A stretch of DNA of 64,000 bases, taken from the IMG/VR virus record IMGVR_UViG_3300001460_000004, positions 1 through 64,000 of that record. One strand, given 5' to 3'. A model generated the notes under the pieces. That model was not told where the DNA came from. It was given only the letters and a program-made list of their open reading frames with translations, and did not search any database. A program made the position numbers and the translations under genes. Position 1 is the first letter of the stretch, and each line of letters opens with the position of its first letter. Below, one piece after another: positions 2,155-40,132 of this stretch.

Positions 2155-2352
2155 TTGTTTAGTAAAAAATGTAAATTACATTTAGAAGAAGTTGGTGAGA
2201 CACGATGGCAACATTTTAAACATGCTTGCTGGGTGTCTTGGCAACTTGAGAAGGCGGCATACGCATGTTTTATTCATGCGTTTGCACCACGCTGGTTCAC
2301 TACATATGCTAGTGACAAATGCAAAGAAGTATTAGACGTTAGGAAAAATTGA
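2155..2352 (+). CDS. small conserved protein (DUF6356-like)
   Basis: HLEEVGETRWQHF...IHAFAPRWFTTYASD pattern. Confidence 0.6.
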   Translation: MFSKKCKLHLEEVGETRWQHFKHACWVSWQLEKAAYACFIHAFAPRWFTTYASDKCKEVLDVRKN

Positions 2353-3020
2353 TGACAGTAAAACTAATAAGTCACAGTATGGCGTCAAAAGAACTTTTTG
2401 ATACTGACAGTAGTCTGCGTGATGCACAAGGGCTAATTGCGTTTTGTGCAAGAGTAAGTAACCCAACCAACCAAATGAACAGTGATACTAGTGAAAAACT
2501 TATTAAATATCTAATTAAACATGCACACTGGTCACCACTTGAAATGGTAAGTGCTTGTTTAGAGATTAATACAACACGTGATATTGCACATCAAATTGTT
2601 AGACATCGATCATTTGCATTCCAGGAATTTAGTCAGCGTTATGCAGATCCTAAAGACCAAGGTGAGCTATTTGAGTACAGCGAAGCACGTTTACAGGATA
2701 CTAAAAATAGACAAAACAGCATTGAAACAGATGATCGCGAATTACAAATGTGGTGGGATGCTCAACAAAAGTTTATTGCCGAAGCTGCAAAAAGCATTTA
2801 TGATAATGCTATTAGCAAAGGTCTAGCTAAAGAACAAGCACGTAAAGTACTACCCGAAGGTCTTACCAAAACACGATTGTATATGAATGGCACAATACGT
2901 AGTTGGGTTCATTATATTGAACTACGTGGCGCAAATGGTACACAAAAGGAACACATGGAAGTTGCACATGCTTGTGCAAAAGTAATTGCTGAGATATTTC
3001 CATTAGCCTCTGACATATAA
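2349..3020 (+). CDS. thyX: flavin-dependent thymidylate synthase
   Basis: HWSPLE and the RHRSFAFQEFSQRY ThyX motif; EQARKVLP. Confidence 0.97.
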   Translation: MMTVKLISHSMASKELFDTDSSLRDAQGLIAFCARVSNPTNQMNSDTSEKLIKYLIKHAHWSPLEMVSACLEINTTRDIAHQIVRHRSFAFQEFSQRYADPKDQGELFEYSEARLQDTKNRQNSIETDDRELQMWWDAQQKFIAEAAKSIYDNAISKGLAKEQARKVLPEGLTKTRLYMNGTIRSWVHYIELRGANGTQKEHMEVAHACAKVIAEIFPLASDI

Positions 3021-3042
3021 TTACCAAGTAAATTATTAAGTT

Positions 3043-3078
3043 AATTACGCATAATTTATTTTTGTGCGTAATTTTTTT
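3043..3078 (+). terminator. rho-independent terminator
   Basis: AATTACGCA...TGCGTAATT stem followed by a T-run after thyX. Confidence 0.65.
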
Positions 3079-3230
3079 GGTTTTTTACACATTTTTTTTA
3101 AATTTTAACCAAGTTTTTTGCAATAATATACCAAAAAATTTAATATGTGGTAAATAAAACTGTACAAACAAAGTTTATTAATTATAATAAACTTTTATTA
3201 CAATTCATATTACATTTAAGGAGACTCCAT

Positions 3231-3929
3231 ATGAAACTAGCAAGTGAATTTGTCGCTGACATTGTTGCCGACAATCAAGCACTATTTGACGCAAGCAAAA
3301 GTAATGTTAAAGCATACTTTGAAGCAAATCCAGATCAAAATGATCAAGTTGAACATTTTATCGGCCGCATGGTCAACGAACGCATGAACATGAGTGAAAT
3401 CAGTCGTGCAATTAGTAATGCCCCAGCAGATACACCTGCAGAAGAACTCGAATTGCTTGCCAAGCAAGCACAAGACGAAGCTCGTCACTTCCGTATGGTC
3501 AAAGAAGTAATTGAGCACATCAAAGGTGAAGAAATTGACGTAGCCGCAGCTATCGAAGCTGAAGCTGCAAAGCCTACTGCTAAAGGTGCAGACTTGTTGG
3601 AAAAATATGGTGCACAAGATGATGAAGCAGCACTTGCTGCATATCAGTTAGTAGCTGAAGGTCGTGCAGAAGCTGTATGGGATCAAATGGCTGACAGCAT
3701 CGAAGACAAGTATATTGCTAGTCGTTATGCAAAAATTGCACGTGATGAAGGTTTTCATGCTACACTAGGAGCACGTAAACTTGAGCAACTAGCAACCAAC
3801 GAAGAAACACAAACTCGTGTGATCGATATTGTAGATCGGATGCGTAAAGACTTATACGATGTAAGTTGCAAAAACACCACTTCAACCGAAGATGGAGCAA
3901 AACTCATTTCGGATGCTTACGGTTGGTAA
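3231..3929 (+). CDS. ferritin-like diiron-carboxylate protein
   Basis: E...DEARH and E...DEGFH paired ExxH motifs; AGGAG RBS supports a start at 3231. Confidence 0.8.
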   Translation: MKLASEFVADIVADNQALFDASKSNVKAYFEANPDQNDQVEHFIGRMVNERMNMSEISRAISNAPADTPAEELELLAKQAQDEARHFRMVKEVIEHIKGEEIDVAAAIEAEAAKPTAKGADLLEKYGAQDDEAALAAYQLVAEGRAEAVWDQMADSIEDKYIASRYAKIARDEGFHATLGARKLEQLATNEETQTRVIDIVDRMRKDLYDVSCKNTTSTEDGAKLISDAYGW

Positions 3930-4493
3930 ATGAATATAGGCTTATCCCAACGGATATTGCATTATAACAACACAGCGTATGATTGCTTAGAACATGGATG
4001 GCACAGTCTATTAAGCAATCATACGCTTTTTTCAATCCCAAACATACTAGAAGTTGATCACAAAGAAACTGTAAGAGCATGTGATTTAATTGTGTTTACA
4101 GGAGGGGATGCCAGTGCAATGCGAACCATTACCGAAACACGATTGCTTACAGAATGCTACCAACAGAATACTGCTGTACTTGGTGTTTGCCATGGAGCAT
4201 TGTTTATCAATCAGTTAGAAGGTGGAGCCAATACCGAATGTGAAAACCACAGTGGAACACAGCACTCAGTAACACTAGATGGTGCAAAACAAATGGTAAA
4301 CAGTTATCACTCCTTTGCAATTGAACAATTAGCATCAAAATTGATACCAACTGGATGGGCAGATGATAAAAGCATAGAATCATTTAAACATCAAGCATTG
4401 AATGTGTGGGGGTTGATTTGGCACCCTGAAAGAATGAAGCAACCCGTTTTACCAATGGACCTAAGGAGGTTTTTAAATGAACGGAATGATTAA
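3930..4493 (+). CDS. class I glutamine amidotransferase / peptidase C26-like
   Basis: TGG, GVCHG nucleophile, VNSYH, WHPE. Confidence 0.9.
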   Translation: MNIGLSQRILHYNNTAYDCLEHGWHSLLSNHTLFSIPNILEVDHKETVRACDLIVFTGGDASAMRTITETRLLTECYQQNTAVLGVCHGALFINQLEGGANTECENHSGTQHSVTLDGAKQMVNSYHSFAIEQLASKLIPTGWADDKSIESFKHQALNVWGLIWHPERMKQPVLPMDLRRFLNERND

Positions 4494-5145
4494 CGTAAAA
4501 CAAACACTTGCTGTACAAGATAGATGGAATCTTAAAATTACCAAAGTTGCTGAAGGCGAAGTTGTAGACTTTAAACCCAAAGGCAGTGCTTATGTAATGA
4601 TGAGAAATGCTGGTTTTAAAAATAAAAATATAAACTTGCATCGTGCAAATGCTTGTGTGAATATATGGGATAACTTTTCTATAGATTGTTCATTGGGACC
4701 AAGTAGTGCATGCGTAATTGAATATCCTGGGTTATGCCCACAAGAAGCAAGAGTTTATATACAAAACAATTTAGATATAGGTAACCTTAGTTACATAGAT
4801 GGTGGATCAAATACCACAGCCATCAATCCTGGGAGACTAGGAGATCCAGTTGTTAATTATGTACACTTTCCTGCACACATGTATCAAACTTTGCACACAC
4901 ATCCAAGTCATAGAATAGGTTTTATACTAAAAGGAAATGGCAGAGTAGAGTTAGACAACAATCAGTTTCACCATATAAACGAAGGTGACATTTTTTACAT
5001 GCGCCGTAATACATTACATAATTTTATATGCGACGATGAAGATGTAATACTGTTTGTATTTGCGCCTGATAGTGGCACAGGCCCTACTGATGAAGTTAAC
5101 CCTCTTAAAATAAGAACATACATAGGACAGCAAAGACATGTCTAA
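4477..5145 (+). CDS. cupin-domain protein
   Basis: QTLHTHPSHRIG...G.G and EGD...H cupin metal-binding motifs. Confidence 0.8.
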   Translation: MNGMINVKQTLAVQDRWNLKITKVAEGEVVDFKPKGSAYVMMRNAGFKNKNINLHRANACVNIWDNFSIDCSLGPSSACVIEYPGLCPQEARVYIQNNLDIGNLSYIDGGSNTTAINPGRLGDPVVNYVHFPAHMYQTLHTHPSHRIGFILKGNGRVELDNNQFHHINEGDIFYMRRNTLHNFICDDEDVILFVFAPDSGTGPTDEVNPLKIRTYIGQQRHV

Positions 5146-5797
5146 CAAACGATTATTAATCGTAACAGGACCACAAGGAAGTGGTAATCATGTGTTTAGT
5201 CGCTTGTTTAGTTTACACCCTTTTGTTAAAGGGTGGGATGCATTGCAAGACGAATATTGGATACCCAGTGATCTTGAACCATTTGCTGATTATTGGGTAA
5301 ACCCTGAAAGATTAGATGAGTTTGACTTTTCGTTGTGTGATTACTGGGTAGCTAATGTAAGTGTTCCTTTTGTGTATGACGGAGTTAAACAAGTACCTAA
5401 AATTTTAGAGTTTGCTAATAAATGTAAACAATTGGGCATTGAAGTTGTGATTGCTATAATTGTACGAGATCAAAACATAAACAGCGAGCAACAAAAACGA
5501 GTACGAAACGAAATAACATTACCAATAGCACAGAATTATTATTACACGCAATTATTACCTAGTGAGTTTAATGTACATTTTTTAGATCACGAAGCATTTT
5601 TCTTACATCGCGATCACTATCTCAAATACTGCGAAAATATACTAAAGTTTCCTGTTGCATGGTACGATGAAAAGATAACCGATTTCATTGACAAAGATGC
5701 TAATTCCAAGTATGTTAAATATGTAGATGAATACTGGCTAGATGAACAAGTTTGGCACGGTATTCAAAAGAAAGAAGACCGAGCAATACCGAAATAA
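5138..5797 (+). CDS. P-loop protein, sulfotransferase/kinase-like
   Basis: LLIVTGPQGSGNH at the N-terminus; IIVRD. Confidence 0.55.
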   Translation: MSNKRLLIVTGPQGSGNHVFSRLFSLHPFVKGWDALQDEYWIPSDLEPFADYWVNPERLDEFDFSLCDYWVANVSVPFVYDGVKQVPKILEFANKCKQLGIEVVIAIIVRDQNINSEQQKRVRNEITLPIAQNYYYTQLLPSEFNVHFLDHEAFFLHRDHYLKYCENILKFPVAWYDEKITDFIDKDANSKYVKYVDEYWLDEQVWHGIQKKEDRAIPK

Positions 5798-5807
5798 GTA
5801 TTTCGTA

Positions 5808-5897
5808 GGACAGTTGGCTGAGAGGTTTAAAGCACCGGTTTACTAAACCGACGAAGGTTAACGCCTTCCCAGGGTTCGAATCCCTGACTGTCCGCCA
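5808..5897 (+). tRNA. trnS: tRNA-Ser with anticodon ACT
   Basis: GGACAGT/ACTGTCC acceptor, G73, CCA; long variable arm GAAGG/CCTTC; anticodon loop TTACTAA. Confidence 0.85.
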
Positions 5898-5975
5898 GAA
5901 TGGGGTCACTACCTAATAAGTGCGTGGGAGGCCACGGTAAGCCTCCCAACTTAATTTAAGATAAGGAACAAGTAG

Positions 5976-6395
5976 TTGGGCAGTAACAAATTTCATTTAG
6001 CCATTGAAGCAGGTCATTTAGTAACAACAATCCCTTTTTATACCGATATACTAGGATGTAAATTAGATATGTACGAAGAAGGTAAATGGCAAGACATAGA
6101 CTTTTGGGGCAATGAATTAACGTTACATCAAAGCGAACCTAGGCCAAACAAAGGTCCGGAACGGAGTCGGCATAGTGTTGATATGGGGGAAGTGTGCGTA
6201 CCACATTTAGGTATACACTTGCCGCTAGACGAATATACACAAGTAAAAGCACGAGTTGAATTAACTGTTGGGTTTTTAGATAAACCATATACACGATTTG
6301 CAGATAATAATGAATATCAGCAAGAAACTTTTTTCGTTGAAGATCCTAATTACAATGTAATTGAAATTAAAAGTATGATGAAAGATGAAAAGTAA
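5976..6395 (+). CDS. VOC/glyoxalase-family protein (COG3565-like)
   Basis: FHLAI, FYTDILGC, DFWGNELTLH, VPHLG, DPNYNVIEIK. Confidence 0.85.
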   Translation: MGSNKFHLAIEAGHLVTTIPFYTDILGCKLDMYEEGKWQDIDFWGNELTLHQSEPRPNKGPERSRHSVDMGEVCVPHLGIHLPLDEYTQVKARVELTVGFLDKPYTRFADNNEYQQETFFVEDPNYNVIEIKSMMKDEK

Positions 6396-6599
6396 ATGGC
6401 AACAGGAAGATCAAAAAAATCTAAAAAATTATTAAATGTGTTTAACCTTGCAACTTATGGACAAAGAGACCTTGTCAAGGTACTAGACGAGACTAATTAC
6501 GCTCTCACAGAATGTCAATTGTCTCAACTAACATGCCCCGAATGTCGAGCCGAATTAGGACATGGAGATTTTTGTCCTAATTGTCGAGTACGGCGCTAA
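6396..6599 (+). CDS. small zinc-ribbon protein
   Basis: CPEC...CPNC at the C-terminus. Confidence 0.5.
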   Translation: MATGRSKKSKKLLNVFNLATYGQRDLVKVLDETNYALTECQLSQLTCPECRAELGHGDFCPNCRVRR

Positions 6600-6638
6600 A
6601 AGGTAAATATATGTAACATAAACCAAGGAACAATTAAA

Positions 6639-6980
6639 ATGCAACAAGTCCCAACTAATCCACCCACACCAACTACTGATGNAAGTATTGCCCCTACTCC
6701 TAATATGCAATACTTTACAATCGATTATATAAATGCAATTAACGGCTCAGCTGGTCCTAGAGGAGCCCAACAAGCAGTAATAACACAAGTGTTACTAACA
6801 GCAACATGTCTTGATGTTGGTCCACTTGGAAATAGCAATACTGAACAAACCTTTTGTACAGAAGTTGACTCAGTTGACGTGTCAGACTTGCAAGCCCGTG
6901 TCAGAGCACTTGGTACATATGATGGTATAGATTTGTCGTCAGCGACAGTTACAGCAAAAGACCTTTATATATCAGTATAA
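6639..6980 (+). CDS. hypothetical late protein (possibly virion)
   Basis: TAAATA at ~6604, AAGGA RBS, Thr/Pro-rich N-terminus. Confidence 0.55.
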   Translation: MQQVPTNPPTPTTDXSIAPTPNMQYFTIDYINAINGSAGPRGAQQAVITQVLLTATCLDVGPLGNSNTEQTFCTEVDSVDVSDLQARVRALGTYDGIDLSSATVTAKDLYISV

Positions 6981-6986
6981 TAAAAC

Positions 6987-7559
6987 ATGAATCAAACATT
7001 TATTCCTAAACGGTGGGAAAAGGAAGAGTATCAATCACGAGCTCACACTGTTTTTGAACAAGTTGATTCGTATCTTTCTACTCCCCCCAAACGTATACTT
7101 GATATTGGCTGTGGGTATGCATATATTAGTCAGCAGTTTCAAAAAAAGTATGGGACTGAGCTGTGGCTACTTGAAGGTGACTTTAATGCAACCAATGACC
7201 GCGAACGCAAAGCTAGTTGGGGTGATGTTGATACTATGAAGTTCTATTTGCCGGTTAAACAGTTAAAGAAATACTGGGACGATCAAAACATTTTGTATAA
7301 TTTTGTAGATGCTAACAATATACATATTAACAATAATTTAACATTTGATTTTGTTTGCAGTTGGTTAAGTTGCGGATATCATTATCCAGTTGCCACATAC
7401 CAATCATTAATTAAAAAACACACTAACAGTTCTAGTGTTATTATTATGGATATTAGAACAAAAACATTAAACAAGCAACAAAGTATAGAAGTTGTAAAGA
7501 AATTAGATCACGACAGTGGTAAAAGAAGTCGTTTACATTATAAATTTAAAACAAACTAG
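6987..7559 (+). CDS. class I SAM-dependent methyltransferase
   Basis: ILDIGCG motif I; FDFVCSW..C GYHY. Confidence 0.85.
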   Translation: MNQTFIPKRWEKEEYQSRAHTVFEQVDSYLSTPPKRILDIGCGYAYISQQFQKKYGTELWLLEGDFNATNDRERKASWGDVDTMKFYLPVKQLKKYWDDQNILYNFVDANNIHINNNLTFDFVCSWLSCGYHYPVATYQSLIKKHTNSSSVIIMDIRTKTLNKQQSIEVVKKLDHDSGKRSRLHYKFKTN

Positions 7560-8766
7560 TTAATTCAGGCAAGAAATCTTGTATGTTACACTTTTTCATT
7601 TTGTCCTGTAATACTATATTTTTCAAAGCTCTTTTAAACAACAGCTCGTCTTGAAATGAATGATTGTCTAAATGCATACGTATAGTTGCACTATCTGTAC
7701 ATGATAATATTGTTTGTTTTATATCTTCCCTTAATGCTCTTGCACTAAAATAATCAGGAGAATATACTGGATTTTCCAAAAATGGAATACTGTGATCATT
7801 AAACCATTGAGCTGTTTGTTCATGATACAAAATATTTAAGTTACTAATTGTATAACTTGCACTTACCATTATACCTTTATCTTGTGCAATTTTAATATTA
7901 TCAACTGTTTGATCCCAACTTAATGGATATCGCATGTATTCAAAAACTTTGCCAGTACCATCCATACTAAAACAAAAGTTTAAATTTGAAAATTGATCAA
8001 GTATGTGTTGTTGTTTTGTTGTTGGCACAAAAGATCCATTTGTTACAAAACTTATACAACACTCAGTGTTGCCAGCGGAAATTAGTTTGCGTAGTATATC
8101 CCAATTGGTTCTAATCATTGTAGGTTCGCCACCAGTAAATCCAATAAACTTTGCAGTTTTATAGTCAATGTCAATACTATCGTGATATTCTTTAACTAAG
8201 TTTACTTCGGGTATATTGGTATTGTTGTATGCGTTCTCTAGTTTTCCCCATCCACTACTACTACCTTTATTGCATGTAACACATGTAGCATTACAAAAAT
8301 TTCCAGCATCAATCTTATAATGAGTAATTACACTTTTACCAGTTTCAGCAATACGATACAATTCTAATAAATCAGTATTGGTGTAATAATCAAGTGTTGA
8401 ATTTTTAATCTGCCTATCGCTCATACGCCCAGCATCTTCTAAGCGCCAACATGCACTACACTGGTTATTTCGTTTGTTTTTTAACAAGTCTTGTTGTATT
8501 GATTCGATATCATACCCAGTTGGCAACTGACAGCAATGTACATCAGCAGGATATTCTCTACCATAAAATGGTAATACACAAAAATTTGTAATGTTGTCTA
8601 ATTGTTGCTGGTGCGATCCTAACATTTGATCTATTTCTTTAGCAACAAATGGTTCAAGATTAATACCAGATGCAAAATCTTTGTATGCAGGCCAATCCTC
8701 GCCAGACATTGCAACATAATCATTTTCGTTTATATTTTGATAGCGAGGTTTTTGTTTTACTTGCAT
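7546..8766 (-). CDS. radical SAM enzyme with N-terminal twitch/SPASM-like Cys cluster
   Basis: FCVLPF..CC..CSACW, CNATCVTC, GGEP, TNG, SMDG..YMRYP. Confidence 0.9.
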   Translation of the reverse strand: MQVKQKPRYQNINENDYVAMSGEDWPAYKDFASGINLEPFVAKEIDQMLGSHQQQLDNITNFCVLPFYGREYPADVHCCQLPTGYDIESIQQDLLKNKRNNQCSACWRLEDAGRMSDRQIKNSTLDYYTNTDLLELYRIAETGKSVITHYKIDAGNFCNATCVTCNKGSSSGWGKLENAYNNTNIPEVNLVKEYHDSIDIDYKTAKFIGFTGGEPTMIRTNWDILRKLISAGNTECCISFVTNGSFVPTTKQQHILDQFSNLNFCFSMDGTGKVFEYMRYPLSWDQTVDNIKIAQDKGIMVSASYTISNLNILYHEQTAQWFNDHSIPFLENPVYSPDYFSARALREDIKQTILSCTDSATIRMHLDNHSFQDELLFKRALKNIVLQDKMKKCNIQDFLPELTSLF

Positions 8767-8771
8767 TCGTA

Positions 8772-8807
8772 TATTTATAAGGTTATGAAAACCCTTGCGT
8801 ATAAATA
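8772..8807. promoter_or_regulatory. divergent pair of T4-type late promoters
   Basis: TATAAATA on the minus strand (8779-8772, facing the rSAM) and on the plus strand (8800-8807, facing the endolysin). Confidence 0.75.
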
Positions 8808-15174: not shown

Positions 15175-15193
15175 AAACTACAAAAAATTTTTC

Positions 15194-15224
15194 TTGACAT
15201 CTTGAACAATTTATGTTATAAATA
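15194..15224 (+). promoter_or_regulatory. overlapping sigma70 and late promoter for the tmRNA
   Basis: TTGACA(15194)-N17-TATAAATA(15217-15224). Confidence 0.75.
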
Positions 15225-15228
15225 ACAT

Positions 15229-15540
15229 TGTAACGTTGAAGCAATTCAAACGCTATACAGGACTCGGGGGCAGTACCCGACGCCTCCACCATAAACACAT
15301 CTAGACTGGTTTTTATATCTGATCAGATAGATGCATTGACAACTTAGGTGTGTTTATGATGGGGGCGAACTAGGATCGACTGGTGGTTAATAGAGTTAGT
15401 GGAGTTATCCGGATCTAAGCACGGTTATCGCGAAGAAAACTTATAATTGCAAATGACAATTATGCGCCAGCAATGGCAATTGCAGCCTAATTAGGTATGC
15501 GGGGTATGGGTTCCACCTAGCAACAGAACGGGCCTGCTAC
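15229..15540 (+). ncRNA. ssrA: two-piece (circularly permuted) tmRNA, alphaproteobacterial type; tag ANDNYAPAMAIAA
   Basis: Acceptor piece ends CGCCTCCACCA (15291) with T-arm GGGGCAGTACCC; intervening hairpin ATAAACACATCTA/TAGGTGTGTTTAT; coding piece starts GGGGGCGAA (15361) giving G3.U70; tag ORF 15449-15490. Outer ends approximate. Confidence 0.93.
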
Positions 15541-25753: not shown

Positions 25754-27031
25754 ATGAGTCTAGAAACTGATGCTAAATCTAATAATAAACCTCTTAAATA
25801 TCTACTAGGTGATACTGACCCTAAACTTGATGCAGAAATGCGTGAAAAACTTATTACAGCACGAGTTGGGTTGTTGCTAAACAATCAATTTTTTGGTAAC
25901 TTGGCTACACGACTTAAATTAGTAAATGCCGATAAGTGGTGTACTACTGCCGCAACTGATGGGAGACATTTTTATTACAACAGTCGATTCATTGAAATGT
26001 TGTCTCAAAAAGAAGTTGAATTTTTGTTTGGGCACGAAGTATTGCATGTAGCATATGATCATTTTGGTCGTAAAGGTGAACGAGATCACCAACTTTGGAA
26101 TGTTGCTTGCGACTATGCTGTAAATGGAGATCTCAAGTGGCACAAGGTAGGACAATTTATTACAACAGTNCCGGCATTGTATGATCCTAAATACAAAGAT
26201 ATTGCAAGCGAAGAAATATATGATGAACTGTACGAAAATGCAGAAAAAATTAATATTGATGATTTAATTGACAAACTATTAGATGAACACATTGATGCCG
26301 ATGATGCAAATGAAGAAGGTGCAGGACCTGGTGAAGAAGGACACGATACTAGTAAGCCAATTCCGTTAACCAAAGAACAAAAAGAACAAATTAAAGATGA
26401 AATGAAAGAAGCATTAATTAATGCGGCTAGTACAAGTGAAGCTGGAAAAGTACCAGCTGGCATACAACGTATTATTAAAGATCTCACTGAGCCTCAAATG
26501 GACTTTAGAGAATTGTTGCAAATGAATATTCAAAGTTTAATTAAAAATGATTTTACATTTGCAAAAGTAAGTCGCAAAGGTTGGCATTTTGATGCAGTAC
26601 TACCTGGTATGAACAACGACGAAGCAATTGATATTGCAATTGGATTGGATCTAAGTGGTAGTATTACTAACGAAATGGGCCGAGATATGATAAGTGAAAT
26701 ATACGGCATTACACAACAATTTGGTACATTTAAAATACATTTGTTTACATTTGACACAGAAGTATATAACTATCAAGTTTTTGATAGTGACAGTGGTCAA
26801 GATATTAGCGAATACGAACTTAAAGGAGGTGGCGGCACTTCATATGAATGCATATTTAACTTCCTTAAAGAAGAGGGCATTGAACCTCAAAAATTAGTAG
26901 TGTTTACAGATGGATATCCGTGGAATACATGGGGTGATCCAAACTACTGCGAAACATTATGGATTATACATAGCAACCCTAATCCAGAACCAGAGTTTGG
27001 TGATTGGGTTCCATATCAACTAGCGGCATGA
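25754..27031 (+). CDS. zincin metallopeptidase plus vWA domain protein (DUF2201-like)
   Basis: TAATDG, HEVLH, WNVACD; MIDAS DLSGS, GGGGT, FTDG. Confidence 0.9.
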   Translation: MSLETDAKSNNKPLKYLLGDTDPKLDAEMREKLITARVGLLLNNQFFGNLATRLKLVNADKWCTTAATDGRHFYYNSRFIEMLSQKEVEFLFGHEVLHVAYDHFGRKGERDHQLWNVACDYAVNGDLKWHKVGQFITTXPALYDPKYKDIASEEIYDELYENAEKINIDDLIDKLLDEHIDADDANEEGAGPGEEGHDTSKPIPLTKEQKEQIKDEMKEALINAASTSEAGKVPAGIQRIIKDLTEPQMDFRELLQMNIQSLIKNDFTFAKVSRKGWHFDAVLPGMNNDEAIDIAIGLDLSGSITNEMGRDMISEIYGITQQFGTFKIHLFTFDTEVYNYQVFDSDSGQDISEYELKGGGGTSYECIFNFLKEEGIEPQKLVVFTDGYPWNTWGDPNYCETLWIIHSNPNPEPEFGDWVPYQLAA

Positions 27032-34374: not shown

Positions 34375-35399
34375 AAGCCTACACCAGTTGGCAACCACTT
34401 GAAGAAGTAATTGTTGGAAGTGTTTATACTCCTGATTACTTTGATTTTATTGAAGATGCAAACACACGAGATCAACTTGGGCAAATATTACATGAAACCA
34501 ATGAAGATCTTAATAATCTACAAAAATTAATAGAAGAATACGGTGCCCGGGTAATGCGTCCAAACTTACCCAATAAAGATCAATTTCAACTACAGCAAGT
34601 AAACAATACTGGAGTTACTCCTCCTCCATTAACTCCAAGAGATTGGCAAATTGTGTTAGGTGAAAAATTATTACGTATATTACCTATACCTGAAACAGAT
34701 GATATTTGCAATGATGTTAATCAACAATACCCAGGGAGTGTAATTGATGTACACAAAGGAAAATGGATTGACAATCATCCAATGATTAATGCCGCAGCAA
34801 GTTGTATTGTAAGATGTGGCACTGATATATTTTTTGATAACAGTGATTTCATGCAACCACATCAAGTTGAATGGATTAAAGAAAATGTATTAGATGATCG
34901 GTTTACAGTACGACAAGCAAAAACAGACGGGCACGGGGATAGTGTATTTGCTATACTCAAACCAGGTGTTATTCTCAGTAGCTTACACGATGCTGAGATA
35001 AACTATAAAGAGAGTTTTCCAGGCTGGGAAGTACATAAGATTTGGGATAGTACCATAATGGCAGCAATGGAAATAGGAAAATTTACATACGAAAACTGGG
35101 ACGGGCGTTGGTATGTACACAACCAAAATCCAACTGATAAATTTAAAACTTTTGTTGATACATACTTGACAGAATGGACAGGTTTTGTTAAAGAAACAGT
35201 GTTTGATGTAAATTGTTTAGTACTAGATGAACAAAACGTTGTGTTTAGTAGTTATAACAGTCCAGTGTTTAAGTTTTGTGAATCTCACGGTATTACACCT
35301 ATTATATGCGAGCAAAGACACAAATACTTCTTTGATAGTGGGATAAGTTGTGCTACACAAGATCTCAAACGCAAAGGCGAATTAGAAAGTTATTTTTGA
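34362..35399 (+). CDS. amidinotransferase (glycine/inosamine-phosphate type)
   Basis: WQPLEEVIVG, PRD, GHGD, DSGISCAT; catalytic His and Cys present. Confidence 0.85.
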   Translation: MSKIKAYTSWQPLEEVIVGSVYTPDYFDFIEDANTRDQLGQILHETNEDLNNLQKLIEEYGARVMRPNLPNKDQFQLQQVNNTGVTPPPLTPRDWQIVLGEKLLRILPIPETDDICNDVNQQYPGSVIDVHKGKWIDNHPMINAAASCIVRCGTDIFFDNSDFMQPHQVEWIKENVLDDRFTVRQAKTDGHGDSVFAILKPGVILSSLHDAEINYKESFPGWEVHKIWDSTIMAAMEIGKFTYENWDGRWYVHNQNPTDKFKTFVDTYLTEWTGFVKETVFDVNCLVLDEQNVVFSSYNSPVFKFCESHGITPIICEQRHKYFFDSGISCATQDLKRKGELESYF

Positions 35400-36223
35400 T
35401 CTTGAAGCCATTGCTTTGCAATGCGATTATAATTTTTATTGTCTAAAAATGATTTAATTTCTTTTCGTACTACATCAAAGTTTTTTGCACGATCAGGATC
35501 TTCAAGCCCACCACTGTTGTCAACAACATGAAAGTCTTTAGCACCAAAGACTTGTTGGAATTGCATAATATTTTGCTGTACTTTTTCCCACATAGATGTT
35601 ACGTTTTTGCTGGGTATCTGTCGTGGTCTCATTTTATTACGTTGTTGTGCAATATTTAAACTAGTGTTAACAAACAACATCATAGTATCGTACCCTAATT
35701 CTTTAAGAGCATCTGAGTCTTGTTTTACTTTGGCTACATCTTTACCTGTGCCATCAATAATAACACCTAACCGTCCTTCTAAATAACCACCTTTACGCAT
35801 GCCAGTGAGNTTTTTAGCACGATCTCTAACATCTTGTCCTTGTTTACTATAAACAACATCGGGATCTGACAAATCTAAGTTATTTTTCTTTGCCAAGTAT
35901 TCGTATATGTCATCGCTGTTGATTGTTTTTAAACCAGTTCCTGTTAATAACTTGCCACTGACAAAACTTTTACCACTGCCAGGTCCGCCTGCAAGAAATA
36001 TTGCTTTAAAAATGTCAGGATCGTTAGGACCTTCGGTTACTTTTTGTGCTAGTTTATCTCCCATTCGATCAATAAATTTTTTAACTTTGTATGCACCTTT
36101 AGCAGTTTTAAGCATACCTTTAACTGCGGCCACACTTACTTTGGCAGCCGCTGCAACTGCTACTATAGTGGCTGCATCAGGTATAGTACCTAAATCTTCA
36201 TTTGTAAATTCTGTGCTACGCAT
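35390..36223 (-). CDS. zeta-toxin/AAA_33-like P-loop kinase with putative capsid-targeting leader
   Basis: AGGPGSGKS, INSDD, IIDGTG, RN..R.R; N-terminus MRSTEFTNE. Confidence 0.75.
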   Translation of the reverse strand: MRSTEFTNEDLGTIPDAATIVAVAAAAKVSVAAVKGMLKTAKGAYKVKKFIDRMGDKLAQKVTEGPNDPDIFKAIFLAGGPGSGKSFVSGKLLTGTGLKTINSDDIYEYLAKKNNLDLSDPDVVYSKQGQDVRDRAKXLTGMRKGGYLEGRLGVIIDGTGKDVAKVKQDSDALKELGYDTMMLFVNTSLNIAQQRNKMRPRQIPSKNVTSMWEKVQQNIMQFQQVFGAKDFHVVDNSGGLEDPDRAKNFDVVRKEIKSFLDNKNYNRIAKQWLQDQK

Positions 36224-36504: not shown

Positions 36505-38010
36505 TTATGTAAAAACCTTAACGCCATACATTGTAGCAAATTCTTGAGCATCTGTTAAGTCATTTACTATGGGTTTGCCTTTAATATTTAAACTTGTGTT
36601 CAGTAACATTGGGCATCCTGTTTTTCGGTGCCACGCTTCGAGTAGTCTTCGTATGCCACTGCCGTCTGGAGCAACTGTTTGTACTCTACTTGTTCCGTCT
36701 GCGTGACAGATTGCAGGATACAAGTCTGGATGCTTACAGGTTGAGGTATACTGCATATAGTTGTTGTAGTATCCTTCAAAGTTATCACTTGCATATTCTT
36801 CTAGTATAACTGGAGCAAAAGGTCTAAATTCTTGTCTTCGTTTAATTCTGTTGACTCTGTCTTTGATGTCATGGCCACGAGGATCAGCAAGCAAACTACG
36901 ATTACCAAAAGCCCGCGGGCCAAACTCTGCTTTGCCGTTAGCAACTCCGCAGATGCCAGTCTCGGCAAGTTCCTTGACTGTTTGTAAAACTGGGTATTCT
37001 CCTTTTATGTCATATCCTAAAAATGCATGATCCATCTTCATGTGTTGTTTTTTATGTGCTAACACTGCTCCTACTGCACTGCCAGCATCACCAGGATTAG
37101 GCATAATCCATACTCGATCAAAGTAATCATATGCTATGCTATTAGCACTGCAATTTAATGCACATCCTCCCATTAAAACTAAGTTTTTACTGTCTACATT
37201 TCGTTGCATCCATATCAATGCTTTTCTAAACATATCTTCATACAGTTTTTGCGTTGCTGCGGCAATATCAAACATATCTTGTTCTGTATCAAGATCAGGA
37301 CGCCAGCGTTGACATCCTCTATGTAAATTTTCCCAAAACAGTGTAGCCGGTTCTTCGATATAAAATCTAGTAGCAACAGTACTAATCAGATCCCATCCTT
37401 CAACAACAAAATGTTCTTTTATATCATTGTATAATCTATTAGGATCGCCATACGCCGCCATACCCATAAGAATGTATTCATCTTCGTTTGGTTTTAATCC
37501 TATACGTTGAGTCATTGCACTGTACCAAAGTCCTATGCTGTGTGGATAACCTTGTGTGTAAACACGTTTTAGTTCCGTGTCTTTGGCTTCCCAGACTGTA
37601 AAGGTTTCAAATTCGCCAATGCTGTCAATACATATGACTGTAGCATCTCTAAAGTTACTAGTATAATAACCAGCGGCAGCATGACTAAGATGATGATCAA
37701 CACACTTAATAGGAGCATCGAGTTTGTAGCTTTTAAGATAACTTTTAATATTGTTTTCATTATACCTCCAACCCTGGCCTGCCCAAAGCTGTCTCAGTGT
37801 TTTTTTAAAAGGACGTTCATACCAAATGATTTCATCCGGTTCTCCCCATTGTTTAGCATAATCAATCAACGCTGTGTTTAAATGTGCATCATTCTTAACA
37901 CCGCTGAAACGTTCGCTGTGACTAGCAAATTCTAATCCGTCGTTGTTGAATACTGCTAGTGCAGCATCGTGGCTGTTGGCACTAATGCCCCAAGTTATTT
38001 TACTATGCAT
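36505..38010 (-). CDS. O-carbamoyltransferase (NodU/CmcH/TobZ family)
   Basis: HDAA, HHLSHAA, GGCALN, GDAGSAVG, EFGPRAFGNRS, RPFAP, LNTSLN. Confidence 0.95.
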   Translation of the reverse strand: MHSKITWGISANSHDAALAVFNNDGLEFASHSERFSGVKNDAHLNTALIDYAKQWGEPDEIIWYERPFKKTLRQLWAGQGWRYNENNIKSYLKSYKLDAPIKCVDHHLSHAAAGYYTSNFRDATVICIDSIGEFETFTVWEAKDTELKRVYTQGYPHSIGLWYSAMTQRIGLKPNEDEYILMGMAAYGDPNRLYNDIKEHFVVEGWDLISTVATRFYIEEPATLFWENLHRGCQRWRPDLDTEQDMFDIAAATQKLYEDMFRKALIWMQRNVDSKNLVLMGGCALNCSANSIAYDYFDRVWIMPNPGDAGSAVGAVLAHKKQHMKMDHAFLGYDIKGEYPVLQTVKELAETGICGVANGKAEFGPRAFGNRSLLADPRGHDIKDRVNRIKRRQEFRPFAPVILEEYASDNFEGYYNNYMQYTSTCKHPDLYPAICHADGTSRVQTVAPDGSGIRRLLEAWHRKTGCPMLLNTSLNIKGKPIVNDLTDAQEFATMYGVKVFT

Positions 38011-39068: not shown

Positions 39069-40132
39069 TATTTAAGTACCTCAATTTGTCGTTGTTTGTA
39101 GTCACGATCGTTCCATTTATATTGATAGACTGTACTCTTATTGCTAGTACTAATGCTATATACATCTAAATGATTTTGTAATACTGCCCATATTTGTTGG
39201 TAATCCTCAGTTCCAAAACTACGTTTTAAATCTACACTTGCAACTTGTGGATGACCTATTGTTAAACTTTTATCATTAGGATCAAAATTATTACGTACTA
39301 GCCAATTTTTAAATTCTGCAATCTCATCTTGTTGAAATTTATAACTACCAGGATCTCTTGCCCATTCAATGTCAAAGTCTGCAGCTGCTTCTGTTTGCGA
39401 TGCCAAGTTACTAGTTGTTAAGTTATCTATTACTGCGTCAGGGCCTTCGTCACAAAACACTTCCCAATGATGTTTTCCTACAGCTTTATTTACTCCAACA
39501 TATACACCGCCTAGCGGTCTATTTAATGTCTCAATCCCAAATAATTCATAGTCAGTAGCATCTAATTTAAATCTTGGTGCTTGCAGCCAACACATTAATT
39601 GACTAGGGCGTTGCCATTCCGGTGCTTGTACTTGTTTGCGATAACTTAATGCCCAACATTCAAATTCGTGACACAATAAATTTAATTGTCGTATGTGCCA
39701 ACGGGTTTCTGGATCAGCTTGTGTGTAGTAACTGCTTATGTTAGTACTACTACCTTGCAGTTTTTCAAAATGATAGTGCAATTGATTCATAGCATCATGA
39801 TTTGGACCTCCGGCAGCTGAGTCAGGCGCACGTTTACCTGGAATAATACAGTTCCCCCAACTATACACATCATCAATTGTATAGTCTAACTGGCTATTAT
39901 TAATTGCCTGGACACTGTTGTTAATTTCATTTATAATAAAATTTCCGTTACGGTCGTTGTTAGCAAAACCCATAAAACAATAATTTTTTTCTAATATTAA
40001 ATTAGAATCTATAACATTGTTTAATGATGTTAGCCATTTACGTGATAGTGTGTTGTCGTGTACATCAATGTGTACAGTAACAAAACTTTCACTATCCCAA
40101 TCTCTAAGTACTATGTTAATTTGATCAAGCAA
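39068..40132 (-). CDS. hypothetical protein in the modification operon
   Basis: NQLHYHFE, LNLLCHEFE, VGKHHWE conserved-looking His/Glu motifs. Confidence 0.7.
   Translation of the reverse strand: MLDQINIVLRDWDSESFVTVHIDVHDNTLSRKWLTSLNNVIDSNLILEKNYCFMGFANNDRNGNFIINEINNSVQAINNSQLDYTIDDVYSWGNCIIPGKRAPDSAAGGPNHDAMNQLHYHFEKLQGSSTNISSYYTQADPETRWHIRQLNLLCHEFECWALSYRKQVQAPEWQRPSQLMCWLQAPRFKLDATDYELFGIETLNRPLGGVYVGVNKAVGKHHWEVFCDEGPDAVIDNLTTSNLASQTEAAADFDIEWARDPGSYKFQQDEIAEFKNWLVRNNFDPNDKSLTIGHPQVASVDLKRSFGTEDYQQIWAVLQNHLDVYSISTSNKSTVYQYKWNDRDYKQRQIEVLK

What the first reader, a model, noticed from the sequence alone, without database searches (positions are those of the whole stretch)
3231..6395. 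Ferritin-like diiron enzyme / GATase / cupin / P-loop / VOC operon
Four tightly coupled genes after a terminator, then a tRNA and a VOC gene. Three are candidate metallo-enzymes (diiron, cupin, VOC), alongside an amidotransferase/hydrolase and a sulfotransferase-like protein. This composition resembles a small-molecule tailoring or catabolic cluster rather than phage replication genes. I do not recognise it as a described pathway.
Basis: partly seen in the sequence, partly recalled or inferred. Interest (0 to 1): 0.65.

Follow-up and report, generated by a model that had tools for sequence, protein, structure and literature searches.

The report
Conserved jumbo-phage diiron oxygenase enzyme cassette
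A marine giant phage carries a tightly packed four-gene enzyme cassette (a new kind of two-iron oxygenase, a gamma-glutamyl hydrolase, a cupin metalloenzyme and a sulfotransferase-like protein) that recurs in hundreds of uncultured phages and whose chemical product is still unknown.

Summary
After a terminator-like hairpin, four abutting or overlapping genes (3231-5797) encode:
- a ferritin-like diiron protein (FERR);
- a class-I amidotransferase / peptidase-C26 hydrolase (GAT);
- a cupin;
- a sulfotransferase-fold protein (PLOOP).

A tRNA and a weak VOC gene follow.

The window is the start of a 230 kb marine jumbo-phage contig. Among 80 IMG/VR loci found through FERR:
- GAT is present in 78, and directly downstream in 63;
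- PLOOP is present in 62 and the cupin in 36, almost always directly upstream of PLOOP;
- the window's exact gene order occurs in 28.

VOC, the tRNA and ThyX are not conserved neighbours.

FERR has the invariant E/ExxH/E/ExxH ligand set but reaches no curated family threshold. It is not the phage's RNR subunit, which lies elsewhere, and it is not ferritin- or rubrerythrin-like in architecture. GAT keeps its Cys-His-Glu triad. Its best family is the Campylobacter gamma-glutamyl-CDP-amidate hydrolase, but far below that family's cutoff.

Other loci add a methyltransferase, further sulfotransferase-like proteins, a possible 2OG-type oxygenase (motif only), an APS-kinase/nucleotidyltransferase fusion, TctA/TctC transporters, glycosyltransferases and a carbamoyltransferase.

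Best reading: an auxiliary tailoring pathway acting on a glycan or small molecule. The substrate is unknown.

The parts
3043..3073 (+). Terminator-like hairpin (12-bp stem plus T-run) closing the upstream ThyX gene and preceding the cassette.
   Evidence: sequence read. A consensus match only: the scan found no more sites than in shuffled sequence.
3161..3188 (+). Sigma-70-like promoter candidate (TGTACA, 16 nt spacer, TATAAT) 43 nt upstream of the FERR start. A GGAG ribosome-binding site lies at about 3221-3224.
   Evidence: Weak, because promoter-like sites are as frequent in shuffles.
3231..3929 (+). FERR: a 232-aa ferritin-like diiron-carboxylate protein. It is the most conserved gene and the anchor of the cassette.
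   Evidence: Pfam and NCBIfam give only sub-threshold hits (DUF455, Ferritin_2, RNR small chain, Rubrerythrin). Alignment A1 shows invariant E50, E83, H86, E143, E173 and H176. The AF2 model has pLDDT 92.7 and is all-helical. VIA gives Z 16.4-13 to CADD, TenA, ADO-like, HrmI, UndA and PaaC. There are 339 IMG/VR relatives and 2435 90%-identity clusters.
3930..4493 (+). GAT: a 187-aa class-I glutamine-amidotransferase-fold hydrolase of the peptidase C26 type. Its start abuts the FERR stop.
   Evidence: Peptidase_C26 scores 54.1 bits and GATase 41.5 bits, both above cutoff. The best NCBIfam family is NF045546, gamma-glutamyl-CDP-amidate hydrolase (E 7e-29, 101 bits, cutoff 250), and the same family is best for two divergent homologues. 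C87, H165 and E167 are invariant. GAT is present in 78 of 80 FERR loci and within 17 nt downstream in 63.
4477..5145 (+). CUPIN: a 222-aa protein with a variable N-terminal half and a highly conserved C-terminal cupin barrel carrying a His-rich metal site.
   Evidence: Cupin_2 scores 39.6 bits and AraC_binding 38.9 bits, both above cutoff. H140, H142, E158, H181 and R146 are invariant in A6. It is present in 36 of 80 loci; in 35 of them PLOOP is also detected, starting -4 to +23 nt after the cupin match.
5138..5797 (+). PLOOP: a 219-aa sulfotransferase-fold protein with a non-canonical nucleotide loop (GPQGSGNH).
   Evidence: No Pfam, NCBIfam or PHROG hit. The AF2 model has pLDDT 91.9. The best Foldseek matches are TPST1/2 (E 1e-4). 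The top 11 VIA matches are all sulfotransferases (Z 12.5-9.6) and rank above P-loop kinases (Z 9.5 or less). The nearest named Atlas clusters are viral sulfotransferase families. It is present in 62 of 80 loci.
5808..5897 (+). tRNA-Ser with anticodon ACU. A neighbour only, NOT part of the conserved cassette.
   Evidence: No equivalent tRNA lies next to the cassette in 44 related loci.
5976..6395 (+). VOC/glyoxalase-like ORF (139 aa, TTG start). A neighbour only, NOT part of the conserved cassette.
   Evidence: Glyoxalase scores 16.5 bits, below the cutoff of 20.6. It has 41 viral relatives, and 0 of 41 lie within 5 kb of FERR, GAT, CUPIN or PLOOP. It is separated from PLOOP by the tRNA and a hairpin at 5925-5948.

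Best explanation
Positions 3231-5797 are a four-gene operon of a marine jumbo phage related to T4 and PA5oct. It is the local version of a modular auxiliary enzyme cassette shared by hundreds of uncultured phages.

What is shown:
- FERR is the constant core. It is a new, almost phage-restricted family of ferritin-like diiron-carboxylate proteins, and its ligand set is that of O2-activating oxidases and oxygenases.
- GAT is a catalytically intact Cys-His-Glu hydrolase. It is closest to enzymes that cleave gamma-glutamyl amides.
- CUPIN is a mononuclear metalloenzyme with a His-rich site.
- PLOOP has a sulfotransferase fold.

What is inferred:
- The cassette tailors a hydroxyl- or amine-bearing acceptor. 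The acceptor is most likely a sugar or glycan, or an imported small organic acid.
- GAT releases an amine (or ammonia) from an N5-substituted glutamine or from glutamine, as Cj1417 does in the Campylobacter capsule pathway.
- FERR oxidises the substrate, by hydroxylation or N-oxygenation.
- The cupin-PLOOP pair then carries out a metal-dependent step coupled to group transfer from a 3'-phosphonucleotide donor, either PAPS or an analogue.

The VOC gene, the tRNA and ThyX are only neighbours. The substrate and the product are unknown.
For: Synteny:
- Of 80 FERR-anchored IMG/VR loci, 78 have GAT, 62 have PLOOP and 36 have the cupin.
- The order FERR-GAT-cupin-PLOOP occurs in 28 loci.
- The FERR-to-GAT gap is 17 nt or less in 63 loci. 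The cupin-to-PLOOP gap is -4 to +23 nt in 35.
- The flanking genes differ between loci.

Catalytic residues are invariant:
- FERR: E50, E83, H86, E143, E173, H176.
- GAT: C87, H165, E167.
- Cupin: H140, H142, E158, H181.

Folds: the FERR model matches diiron oxidases best, and the nearest named Atlas clusters are AurF-like, PaaC and COQ7. PLOOP matches sulfotransferases.

GAT's best family is the gamma-glutamyl-CDP-amidate hydrolase, more than 10 orders of magnitude ahead of the glutaminase subunits, in three divergent members. The role of Cj1415-1418 is taken from PMC11800397.

Accessory genes in other loci point to tailoring chemistry:
- a SAM methyltransferase-like protein (c1);
- a protein weakly matching Sulfotransfer_3 (c3);
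- a protein with an HxD...H motif, 2OG-oxygenase-like by motif reading only (c5);
- an APS-kinase / nucleotidyltransferase fusion (c21);
- TctA/TctC transporters;
- in about 16 loci, an upstream run of carbamoyltransferase, rSAM/SPASM, GT25 and a GT8-like protein (sub-threshold), with a Methyltransf_24 protein (c24) in about 12 loci.

Two bacterial chromosomes, Massilia and Janthinobacterium, carry FERR-cupin-PLOOP together with c1, c3, a sulfatase-family protein and a LigT phosphoesterase.
Against: - No substrate, product or donor is shown.
- No gene of the cassette reaches an equivalog threshold.
- PLOOP lacks the usual Lys/Arg of the sulfotransferase 5'-phosphosulfate loop; an invariant Gln13 takes its place. 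This rests on my reading of the motifs and was not tested. PAPS use is therefore uncertain.
- The window's own 230 kb lacks the APS kinase, the glutamine-kinase-type domain, and c1, c3 and c21. The fuller pathway seen elsewhere is incomplete here, or it depends on the host.
- FERR occurs with GAT alone in 17 loci (15 in the order ferr-gat and 2 as gat-ferr). It occurs without GAT in 2 of the 80 anchored loci, one further phage locus and both bacteria. The four proteins therefore need not act on one molecule.
- Glycosyltransferase neighbours occur in only about 16 of 85 loci and Tct genes in about 29.
- No RNA data were found.
Confidence: 0.4

Rival explanations
1. Nutrient-scavenging (catabolic) auxiliary module. 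The cassette takes in and breaks down an organosulfur or organonitrogen compound, for example a gamma-glutamyl amide, a sulfonate or a sulfate ester, to feed the infected cell. FERR and the cupin would act as dealkylating or desulfonating oxygenases, and GAT would release glutamate.
For: - TctC (in 20 + 9 loci) and TctA (about 9 loci) are encoded inside the module between GAT and the downstream genes.
- A sulfatase-family gene sits in the bacterial versions.
- GAT belongs to the gamma-glutamyl hydrolase type.
- The phage is marine, and scavenging genes are common in such phages (general knowledge).
Against: - Sulfotransferase-fold proteins, an APS-kinase fusion, methyltransferases, glycosyltransferases and a carbamoyltransferase are biosynthetic or tailoring enzymes.
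- No transporter lies near the cassette in this window.
- No match to known desulfonating or C-P/C-N cleaving families.
Confidence: 0.2
2. FERR and GAT form a two-subunit glutamine-dependent enzyme. GAT would be a true glutaminase that channels ammonia to the diiron site, for example to make an arylamine such as a PABA-like compound, as CADD does alone in Chlamydia. The cupin and PLOOP would be downstream or independent.
For: - FERR and GAT are adjacent, with a gap of 17 nt or less, in 63 of 80 loci, and in this window the stop abuts the start.
- CADD is the top structural match (Z 16.4, 201 residues aligned).
- GAT also matches PabA/TrpG and GuaA subunits, though much less well.
- A natural fusion of a DJ-1/PfpI-like domain and a ferritin-like domain exists in the PDB (3fse, listed).
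- The folate-dependent ThyX gene lies directly upstream in this window.
Against: - GAT's best family by far is a stand-alone hydrolase.
- FERR is far more conserved than GAT (mean identity 66% against 39%).
- FERR occurs without GAT in a few phage loci and in both bacteria.
- FERR's ligand pattern is the four-helix ferritin type, not the E/H/E/HxxxDxxH pattern of CADD-type oxidases (plus my knowledge of that family).
- ThyX adjacency is not conserved.
Confidence: 0.15
3. Nucleic-acid hypermodification. The cassette oxidises, activates and aminates a base in phage DNA or in tRNA. This would parallel the known thymidine hypermodification route of hydroxymethyl, then activation by a P-loop enzyme, then amine substitution. 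Here glutamine would be the masked amine and GAT would unmask it.
For: - The cassette lies next to ThyX here, and near DNA polymerase and PhoH in many loci.
- FERR is very strongly conserved, as nucleotide-metabolism genes are.
- LigT-type phosphoesterase and 5'-nucleotidase domains lie in the bacterial loci.
- The chemical logic is plausible (inference).
Against: - No DNA-binding, glycosylase, transglycosylase or hydroxymethylase partner was seen.
- PLOOP lacks a Walker lysine and folds like sulfotransferases rather than kinases.
- Transporters and glycosyltransferases inside the module do not fit.
- The cassette also sits in bacterial chromosomes with native GC content.
- The tRNA is not a conserved neighbour.
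Confidence: 0.12
4. FERR is an iron-storage or oxidative-stress protein (ferritin, Dps or rubrerythrin type), or a spare RNR small subunit, and its neighbours are unrelated.
For: - JGI pipelines call relatives 'rubrerythrin'.
- Atlas clusters are auto-named 'ribonucleoside-diphosphate reductase family'.
- Weak sub-threshold hits to Ferritin_2, Rubrerythrin and Ribonuc_red_sm.
Against: - All those hits fall below the curated cutoffs.
- At 232 aa with nine helices, FERR is larger than ferritin, Dps or Bfr. Those align over only 134-152 residues at Z 11-12, below the enzyme matches.
- There is no rubredoxin-type CxxC pair; only one Cys is invariant.
- A genuine NrdB (160 bits) is encoded at 193181-194080 of the same genome.
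- The strict linkage to GAT, the cupin and PLOOP argues for a shared pathway.
Confidence: 0.05

Closest known systems
Campylobacter jejuni O-methyl phosphoramidate (MeOPN) donor pathway, Cj1415-Cj1418
   Same: - GAT's best-scoring family is the Cj1417 hydrolase, aligned over its full length.
- Some related phage loci add an APS-kinase-like / nucleotidyltransferase fusion, comparable to Cj1415 plus Cj1416, and a methyltransferase.
- Both involve transferases that would use a PAPS-like 3'-phosphonucleotide donor, and both sit in a glycan-tailoring context (pathway from PMC11800397).
   Different: - GAT scores 101 bits against a cutoff of 250.
- No glutamine kinase (PPDK_N) and no APS kinase are found in this genome.
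- The c21 fusion hits none of the Campylobacter equivalogs.
- MeOPN clusters have no ferritin-like oxygenase or cupin.
Ferritin-like diiron oxidases and oxygenases (AurF/CmlI N-oxygenases, PaaA/PaaC, aldehyde-deformylating oxygenase, COQ7, MiaE)
   Same: - Four-helix core with E / ExxH / E / ExxH ligands.
- About 230 aa, as in ADO.
- Structural Z of 13-15.
- The nearest named Atlas clusters are AurF-like, PaaC and COQ7.
   Different: - No family threshold is reached.
- The profile finds only 111 50%-identity clusters in 1.84 billion proteins, and the distant ones are at best weakly DUF455-like.
- AurF's seventh ligand, an extra His, has no counterpart, since I169 is invariant at that position. 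This rests on my knowledge of AurF.
Heme-oxygenase-like diiron oxidases (CADD, UndA, BesC, SznF, FlcD, HrmI)
   Same: - They give the best overall structural superposition (CADD Z 16.4, UndA 14.2, HrmI 15.0).
- SznF also combines a diiron domain with a cupin.
   Different: FERR's ligands lie on four helices in the ferritin pattern, not the three-helix E/H, E, HxxxDxxH pattern (plus knowledge). Z values are tied with the ferritin-like ADO homologues.
PAPS-dependent sulfotransferases (TPST1/2, the olefin-synthase sulfotransferase domain, NDST, Stf)
   Same: - The fold matches (Z 12.5-9.6; the top 11 matches are all sulfotransferases).
- An Arg-Asp motif (R110-D111) sits where the 3'-phosphate-binding motif lies (my reading).
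   Different: - No Pfam sulfotransferase hit.
- An invariant Gln13 replaces the catalytic Lys/Arg, and Gln118 replaces the 3'-phosphate Ser (my reading, untested).
Gamma-glutamyl 'masking' pathways: the plant glucosinolate route (GGP1 peptidase plus SOT sulfotransferases) and the bacterial gamma-glutamyl-amine routes (Ipu, Atd, Puu)
   Same: An oxygenase, a class-I amidotransferase-fold gamma-glutamyl hydrolase and, in glucosinolates, a sulfotransferase all act on one substrate. GGP1 and PuuD appear among the PDB matches to GAT.
   Different: This is an analogy of logic only. No glutamine-synthetase-like ligase, P450, Rieske or C-S lyase partner was found.

Membership tests
Ferritin-like diiron-carboxylate superfamily | Four-helix bundle carrying E ... 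ExxH ... E ... ExxH metal ligands. | tested here: met
   E50, E83, H86, E143, E173 and H176 are invariant in 28 sequences. In the model they lie on helices 36-62, 70-98, 132-156 and 160-187.
Ferritin-like diiron-carboxylate superfamily | Membership of a curated family at its threshold. | tested here: not met
   DUF455 scores 19.7 against a cutoff of 34.3, Ferritin_2 19.5 against 24.7, Ribonuc_red_sm 16.1 against 33.6, and Rubrerythrin 13.5 against 22.8. The PDB profile search gives nothing significant.
Ferritin / bacterioferritin / Dps (iron storage) | A compact bundle of about 160-180 aa that forms cages. | tested here: not met
   FERR has 232 aa and nine helices. Dps and Bfr align over only 134-152 residues at Z 11-12, below the enzyme matches. 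Oligomeric state was not tested.
Rubrerythrin | A diiron domain plus a rubredoxin-like CxxC...CxxC domain. | tested here: not met
   Only one Cys (C213) is invariant and there is no CxxC pair. The Pfam score is below cutoff.
Ribonucleotide reductase small subunit (R2/NrdB) | Matches the R2 family, and is the genome's only R2. | tested here: not met
   FERR scores 16.1 bits against a cutoff of 33.6. A true NrdB scoring 160 bits lies at 193181-194080 of the same contig.
Heme-oxygenase-like diiron oxidases (CADD/UndA/SznF type) | A seven-helix HO-like fold. | tested here: inconclusive
   CADD gives Z 16.4 and TenA 16.2, but these are tied within about 1 Z unit with ferritin-like ADO homologues at 15.2.
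Heme-oxygenase-like diiron oxidases (CADD/UndA/SznF type) | The three-helix ligand pattern E/H, E, H-x3-D/E-x2-H. | tested here: not met
   The observed pattern is two ExxH motifs plus two Glu on four helices. The reference pattern is from my own knowledge.
Class-I glutamine amidotransferase / Peptidase C26 | Family score above threshold and a Cys-His-Glu triad. | tested here: met
   Peptidase_C26 scores 54.1 against a cutoff of 20.5 and GATase 41.5 against 22.8. C87, H165 and E167 are invariant in 30 sequences.
Gamma-glutamyl-CDP-amidate hydrolase (Cj1417 equivalog, NF045546) | Score at or above the equivalog cutoff of 250 bits. | tested here: not met
   Scores are 101, 90 and 65 bits in three members. 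This is nevertheless the best family for each.
MeOPN donor pathway (Cj1415-1418) | Partner glutamine kinase, cytidylyltransferase and APS-kinase-like kinase in the same genome. | tested here: not met
   No PPDK_N domain and no APS_kinase domain in the 230 kb, which is an incomplete genome. A kinase/nucleotidyltransferase fusion is present in only 13 related loci, and it hits no Campylobacter equivalog.
Cupin superfamily | Cupin barrel score above threshold and conserved metal-binding His residues. | tested here: met
   Cupin_2 scores 39.6 against a cutoff of 27.2. H140, H142 and H181 (plus E158) are invariant. Metal identity was not tested.
PAPS-dependent sulfotransferases | Sulfotransferase fold. 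| tested here: met
   The top 11 VIA matches are all sulfotransferases (Z 12.5-9.6). Foldseek places TPST1/2 first at E 1e-4. The nearest named Atlas clusters are sulfotransferase families.
PAPS-dependent sulfotransferases | A 5'-phosphosulfate loop with a catalytic Lys/Arg, and a 3'-phosphate motif Arg...Ser. | tested here: inconclusive
   The loop reads GPQGSGNH with Gln13 invariant. R110 is present, but Gln118 sits where the Ser is expected. The residue correspondence is my reading and not a structural alignment. There is no Pfam hit.
VOC / glyoxalase superfamily (the ORF at 5976-6395) | Family score above threshold. | tested here: inconclusive
   Glyoxalase scores 16.5 bits against a cutoff of 20.6, aligned across the whole domain.

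The most novel reading that the evidence does not exclude
FERR founds a new, essentially phage-borne class of diiron oxygenases. With GAT, the cupin and the sulfotransferase-fold protein it would form an undescribed pathway. In that pathway glutamine is the masked nitrogen donor, and a PAPS-like nucleotide donor installs a charged group, such as a sulfate, sulfamate or phosphoramidate, on a host surface glycan or an imported metabolite. This would remodel phage receptors or host metabolism during infection by abundant marine and freshwater jumbo phages.
Probability: 0.15. Interest if true: 0.8.

Novelty: new variant of a known kind. Interest (0 to 1): 0.6.

Why it matters
The cassette is not a curiosity of one contig. 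FERR has more than 2,400 sequence clusters, all unnamed or auto-named, in environmental data. It has 339 relatives on viral contigs of up to 354 kb, and this phage's DNA turns up in marine, seawater and brine metagenomes from many studies. Yet FERR reaches no curated family threshold, matches none of 50,697 sequenced phage records, and has almost no bacterial counterpart.

A strongly conserved enzyme set of unknown chemistry in abundant uncultured jumbo phages is a concrete and cheap target. It is four small soluble proteins, and it could be used to discover:
- a new diiron reaction;
- a new use of the gamma-glutamyl 'masking' strategy;
- a new way in which phages rewire host surfaces or metabolism.

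Tried and rejected
- **Sequenced phages.** Megablast of 3000-8800 and tblastn of FERR and the cupin against 50,697 phage records gave no match.
- **Profile searches of the PDB.** The searches with FERR and PLOOP gave nothing significant. The cupin profile gave only marginal matches to uncharacterised cupin-domain proteins (best E 7e-4). The search with c5 gave nothing interpretable.
- **Foldseek.** FERR against the PDB and against BFVD gave no match at E <= 1e-3.
- **Complex prediction.** Complex prediction on FERR plus GAT returned no verdict (score 0.30, mark 0.32). It is not evidence either way.
- **PLOOP against c3.** hhalign gave no detectable homology (probability 8%).
- **c1 against the window's methyltransferase at 6987-7559.** Only the SAM motif aligns, so it is not taken as an orthologue.
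- **Accessory genes in the own genome.** c1, c3, c21, Tct, APS kinase, PPDK_N and Sulfotransfer_3 were all absent. Only a partial c5-like ORF was found, at 206827-207144.
- **Distant FERR relatives.** They gave unrelated or uninformative contexts.
- **Bacterial relatives.** In the family-level genome sample, only 1 of 201 genomes had FERR.
- **Literature.** The search for this gene combination found nothing relevant.
- **RNA.** No RNA-seq holder was found.
- **dN/dS.** Not computed, because synonymous sites would be saturated at about 60-70% protein identity.

Rejected ideas: FERR as RNR R2, ferritin or rubrerythrin; VOC and the tRNA as part of the operon; conserved ThyX linkage.

Full report
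**Setting**

The window is bases 1-64000 of a 230,036-bp linear IMG/VR virus record that CheckV estimates to be 66% complete. It has about 36% GC. It carries ThyX, tRNAs, a tmRNA, tail-fibre-like genes and many radical-SAM genes. In related loci the DNA polymerase is 47-50% identical to those of jumbo phages Phosso, Vibrio phage 2.275.O and PA5oct. The DNA of 3100-6400 is held, at 20% or more of sampled words, by marine, seawater and brine metagenomes from many studies. No RNA holder was found. This is therefore a marine jumbo phage.

**Observation**

- ThyX (2349-3020) is followed by a terminator-like hairpin at 3043-3073, a promoter-like site at 3161-3188, and a GGAG motif before the ATG at 3231.
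- Four genes then abut or overlap: FERR 3231-3929, GAT 3930-4493, cupin 4477-5145 and PLOOP 5138-5797.
- A tRNA-Ser (5808-5897), a hairpin (5925-5948) and a 139-aa VOC-like ORF (5976-6395) follow.

The promoter and terminator scans are not enriched over shuffles, so they are only consistent with an operon and do not prove one.

**Is it more than chance?**

Yes. FERR finds 339 relatives on IMG/VR contigs at 62-71% identity and 2,435 90%-identity clusters in the large protein collection. In the 80 loci anchored on FERR:
- GAT is present in 78, and starts within 17 nt of the FERR match in 63.
- PLOOP is present in 62 and the cupin in 36. In 35 of those 36, PLOOP follows the cupin at -4 to +23 nt.
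- The window's exact order occurs in 28.

The surrounding genes differ widely between loci, so the linkage is selected rather than inherited with a frozen genome.

- VOC has 41 viral relatives, and none lies within 5 kb of a cassette gene.
- Only 2 of 44 related loci carry any tRNA, and those are unrelated ones.
- ThyX is nearby in one other locus only.

The unit is four genes.

**The proteins**

*FERR.* It reaches no curated family threshold, but E50, E83, H86, E143, E173 and H176 are invariant. In a confident model (pLDDT 92.7) these residues lie on the four core helices of a ferritin-type bundle. Structural neighbours are diiron or related enzymes: CADD at Z 16.4, TenA at 16.2, ADO homologues at about 15, and HrmI, UndA, PaaC and R2 at about 12-15. 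The iron-storage proteins score lower and align over shorter stretches. The nearest named metagenomic clusters are AurF-like, PaaC and COQ7. An exhaustive profile search of 1.84 billion representatives finds only 111 clusters, and the distant ones are at best weakly DUF455-like. A real NrdB is encoded at 193181-194080. FERR is therefore a new, isolated family of putative O2-activating diiron enzymes. It is not ferritin, rubrerythrin or R2.

*GAT.* It is a class-I amidotransferase / peptidase C26 protein scoring above threshold, with C87, H165 and E167 invariant. In three divergent members its best NCBIfam family is the Campylobacter gamma-glutamyl-CDP-amidate hydrolase, by more than 10 orders of magnitude, but at 65-101 bits against a cutoff of 250.

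*Cupin.* It has a variable N-terminal half and a nearly invariant C-terminal barrel with H140, H142, E158, H181 and R146.

*PLOOP.* It has no family hit. Its model (pLDDT 91.9) matches sulfotransferases first by three methods. Its nucleotide loop has Gln where sulfotransferases have the catalytic Lys/Arg (my reading), so the donor may not be ordinary PAPS.

**Wider module**

Other loci add the following:
- a divergent upstream gene with a SAM-methyltransferase motif (c1; 73 loci);
- a protein weakly matching Sulfotransfer_3 (c3; 65 loci);
- a protein with an HxD...H motif, as in 2OG oxygenases (c5; 45 loci);
- second PLOOP paralogues;
- an APS-kinase-like / nucleotidyltransferase fusion (c21; 13 loci);
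- TctC and TctA transporter genes;
- in about 16 loci, an upstream co-directional run of carbamoyltransferase, rSAM/SPASM, GT25 and a GT8-like (sub-threshold) glycosyltransferase, and in about 12 loci a Methyltransf_24 protein (c24).

None of these accessory genes lies near the cassette in this window. The 230 kb lacks c1, c3, c21, APS kinase and a glutamine-kinase-type domain, and holds only a partial c5-like ORF.

A scan of one genome per species found only two bacterial chromosomes with FERR-cupin-PLOOP: Massilia atriviolacea and a Janthinobacterium, with about 60% GC at the locus. Both also carry c1, c3, a sulfatase-family gene and a LigT-type phosphoesterase, and neither has GAT. Three further hits are low-GC MAG contigs that look like phage DNA. 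Only 1 of 201 sampled genomes of that bacterial family has FERR.

**Mechanism**

What is shown is four intact enzymes of defined folds under joint selection.

What is inferred is a tailoring pathway. GAT cleaves a gamma-glutamyl amide, as Cj1417 does (PMC11800397), to expose an amine or release ammonia. FERR performs an O2-dependent oxidation. The cupin-PLOOP pair performs a metal-dependent step coupled to group transfer from a 3'-phosphonucleotide donor.

The acceptor is unknown. The glycosyltransferase, carbamoyltransferase and methyltransferase neighbours, and the Campylobacter capsule analogy, point to a glycan. The Tct transporters point to an imported small acid.

I give this general reading 0.4. 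The rivals are:
- catabolic scavenging (0.2);
- a FERR-GAT glutamine-dependent two-subunit enzyme (0.15);
- nucleic-acid hypermodification (0.12);
- storage or stress protein (0.05).

**Comparison and novelty**

The cassette works most like known gamma-glutamyl 'masking' plus oxygenase plus sulfotransferase logics (the MeOPN donor pathway; the glucosinolate route). It fails the membership tests for each of them, and FERR belongs to no described family. I rate it a new variant of a known kind: a phage auxiliary enzyme cassette built from known superfamilies, with a new diiron family and unknown chemistry.

Noticed in passing
window 15190-15538 (+): The phage encodes a complete two-piece (permuted) tmRNA of the alphaproteobacterial type. 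Rfam alpha_tmRNA scores 132 bits, and ARAGORN gives the tag ANDNYAPAMAIAA. This suggests an alphaproteobacterial host and is unusual phage cargo.
   Followed up: partly
window 5808-5897 (+): The tRNA-Ser has an ACU anticodon, that is, A at the wobble position 34. This is rare for serine tRNAs. It scores 53 bits against the Rfam tRNA model.
   Followed up: partly
window 40125-48220 (-), plus 7546-8766 (-): A run of at least five radical-SAM (some SPASM) paralogues lies here: 40125-41456, 41419-42630, 42627-44348, 44330-45667 and 46787-48220. A separate 'twitch-domain' radical-SAM protein (N_Twi_rSAM, 207 bits) lies at 7546-8766. A NodU/NolO-like carbamoyltransferase at 36505-38010 and a zeta-toxin-like / AAA_33 kinase at 35390-36223 sit beside the run. 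This looks like a second, larger tailoring cluster.
   Followed up: partly
window 56335-63693 (-): A giant ORF of 2,452 aa, which extends to 2,554 aa if read to the window end. It was not analysed.
   Followed up: no
window 6639-6980 (+): The translation of this ORF contains an X, so there is an ambiguous base in the assembly at about 6680.
   Followed up: no
L088 (Massilia atriviolacea chromosome) and L090 (Janthinobacterium sp.): FERR-cupin-PLOOP, together with the c1 methyltransferase, c3, a sulfatase-family gene and a LigT phosphoesterase, form a conserved island in two Oxalobacteraceae chromosomes. The proteins are 66-84% identical between the two. GC is slightly lower in the island than in the flanks, and GAT is absent. 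Massilia has a glutamine-cyclotransferase / 5'-nucleotidase fusion upstream instead.
   Followed up: partly
L120-L122, 4427-5399: In three viral loci a homologue of the window's methyltransferase (6987-7559) lies directly upstream of the VOC homologue. VOC may therefore pair with that methyltransferase rather than with the cassette.
   Followed up: no
L087 (contig binned as Nitrosopumilaceae MAG), L089 (Rhodobacteraceae bin), L091 (Chitinophagaceae MAG): These are low-GC contigs (33-38%) carrying the phage cassette. In L091 it sits beside homologues of genes that flank the cassette in the phage loci, one of them virion-structural by PHROG. They are filed in bacterial or archaeal MAGs and are probably mis-binned phage DNA.
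   Followed up: partly
G000 contig 206827-207144 (outside the window): A partial homologue of the c5 HxD...H protein (C-terminal half, in a 175-aa open frame) lies about 200 kb from the cassette.
   Followed up: no
window 25754-27031 (+): A 425-aa HNH endonuclease (phrog_1314, E 4e-109) is embedded among structural or unknown genes. It may be a mobile element.
   Followed up: no
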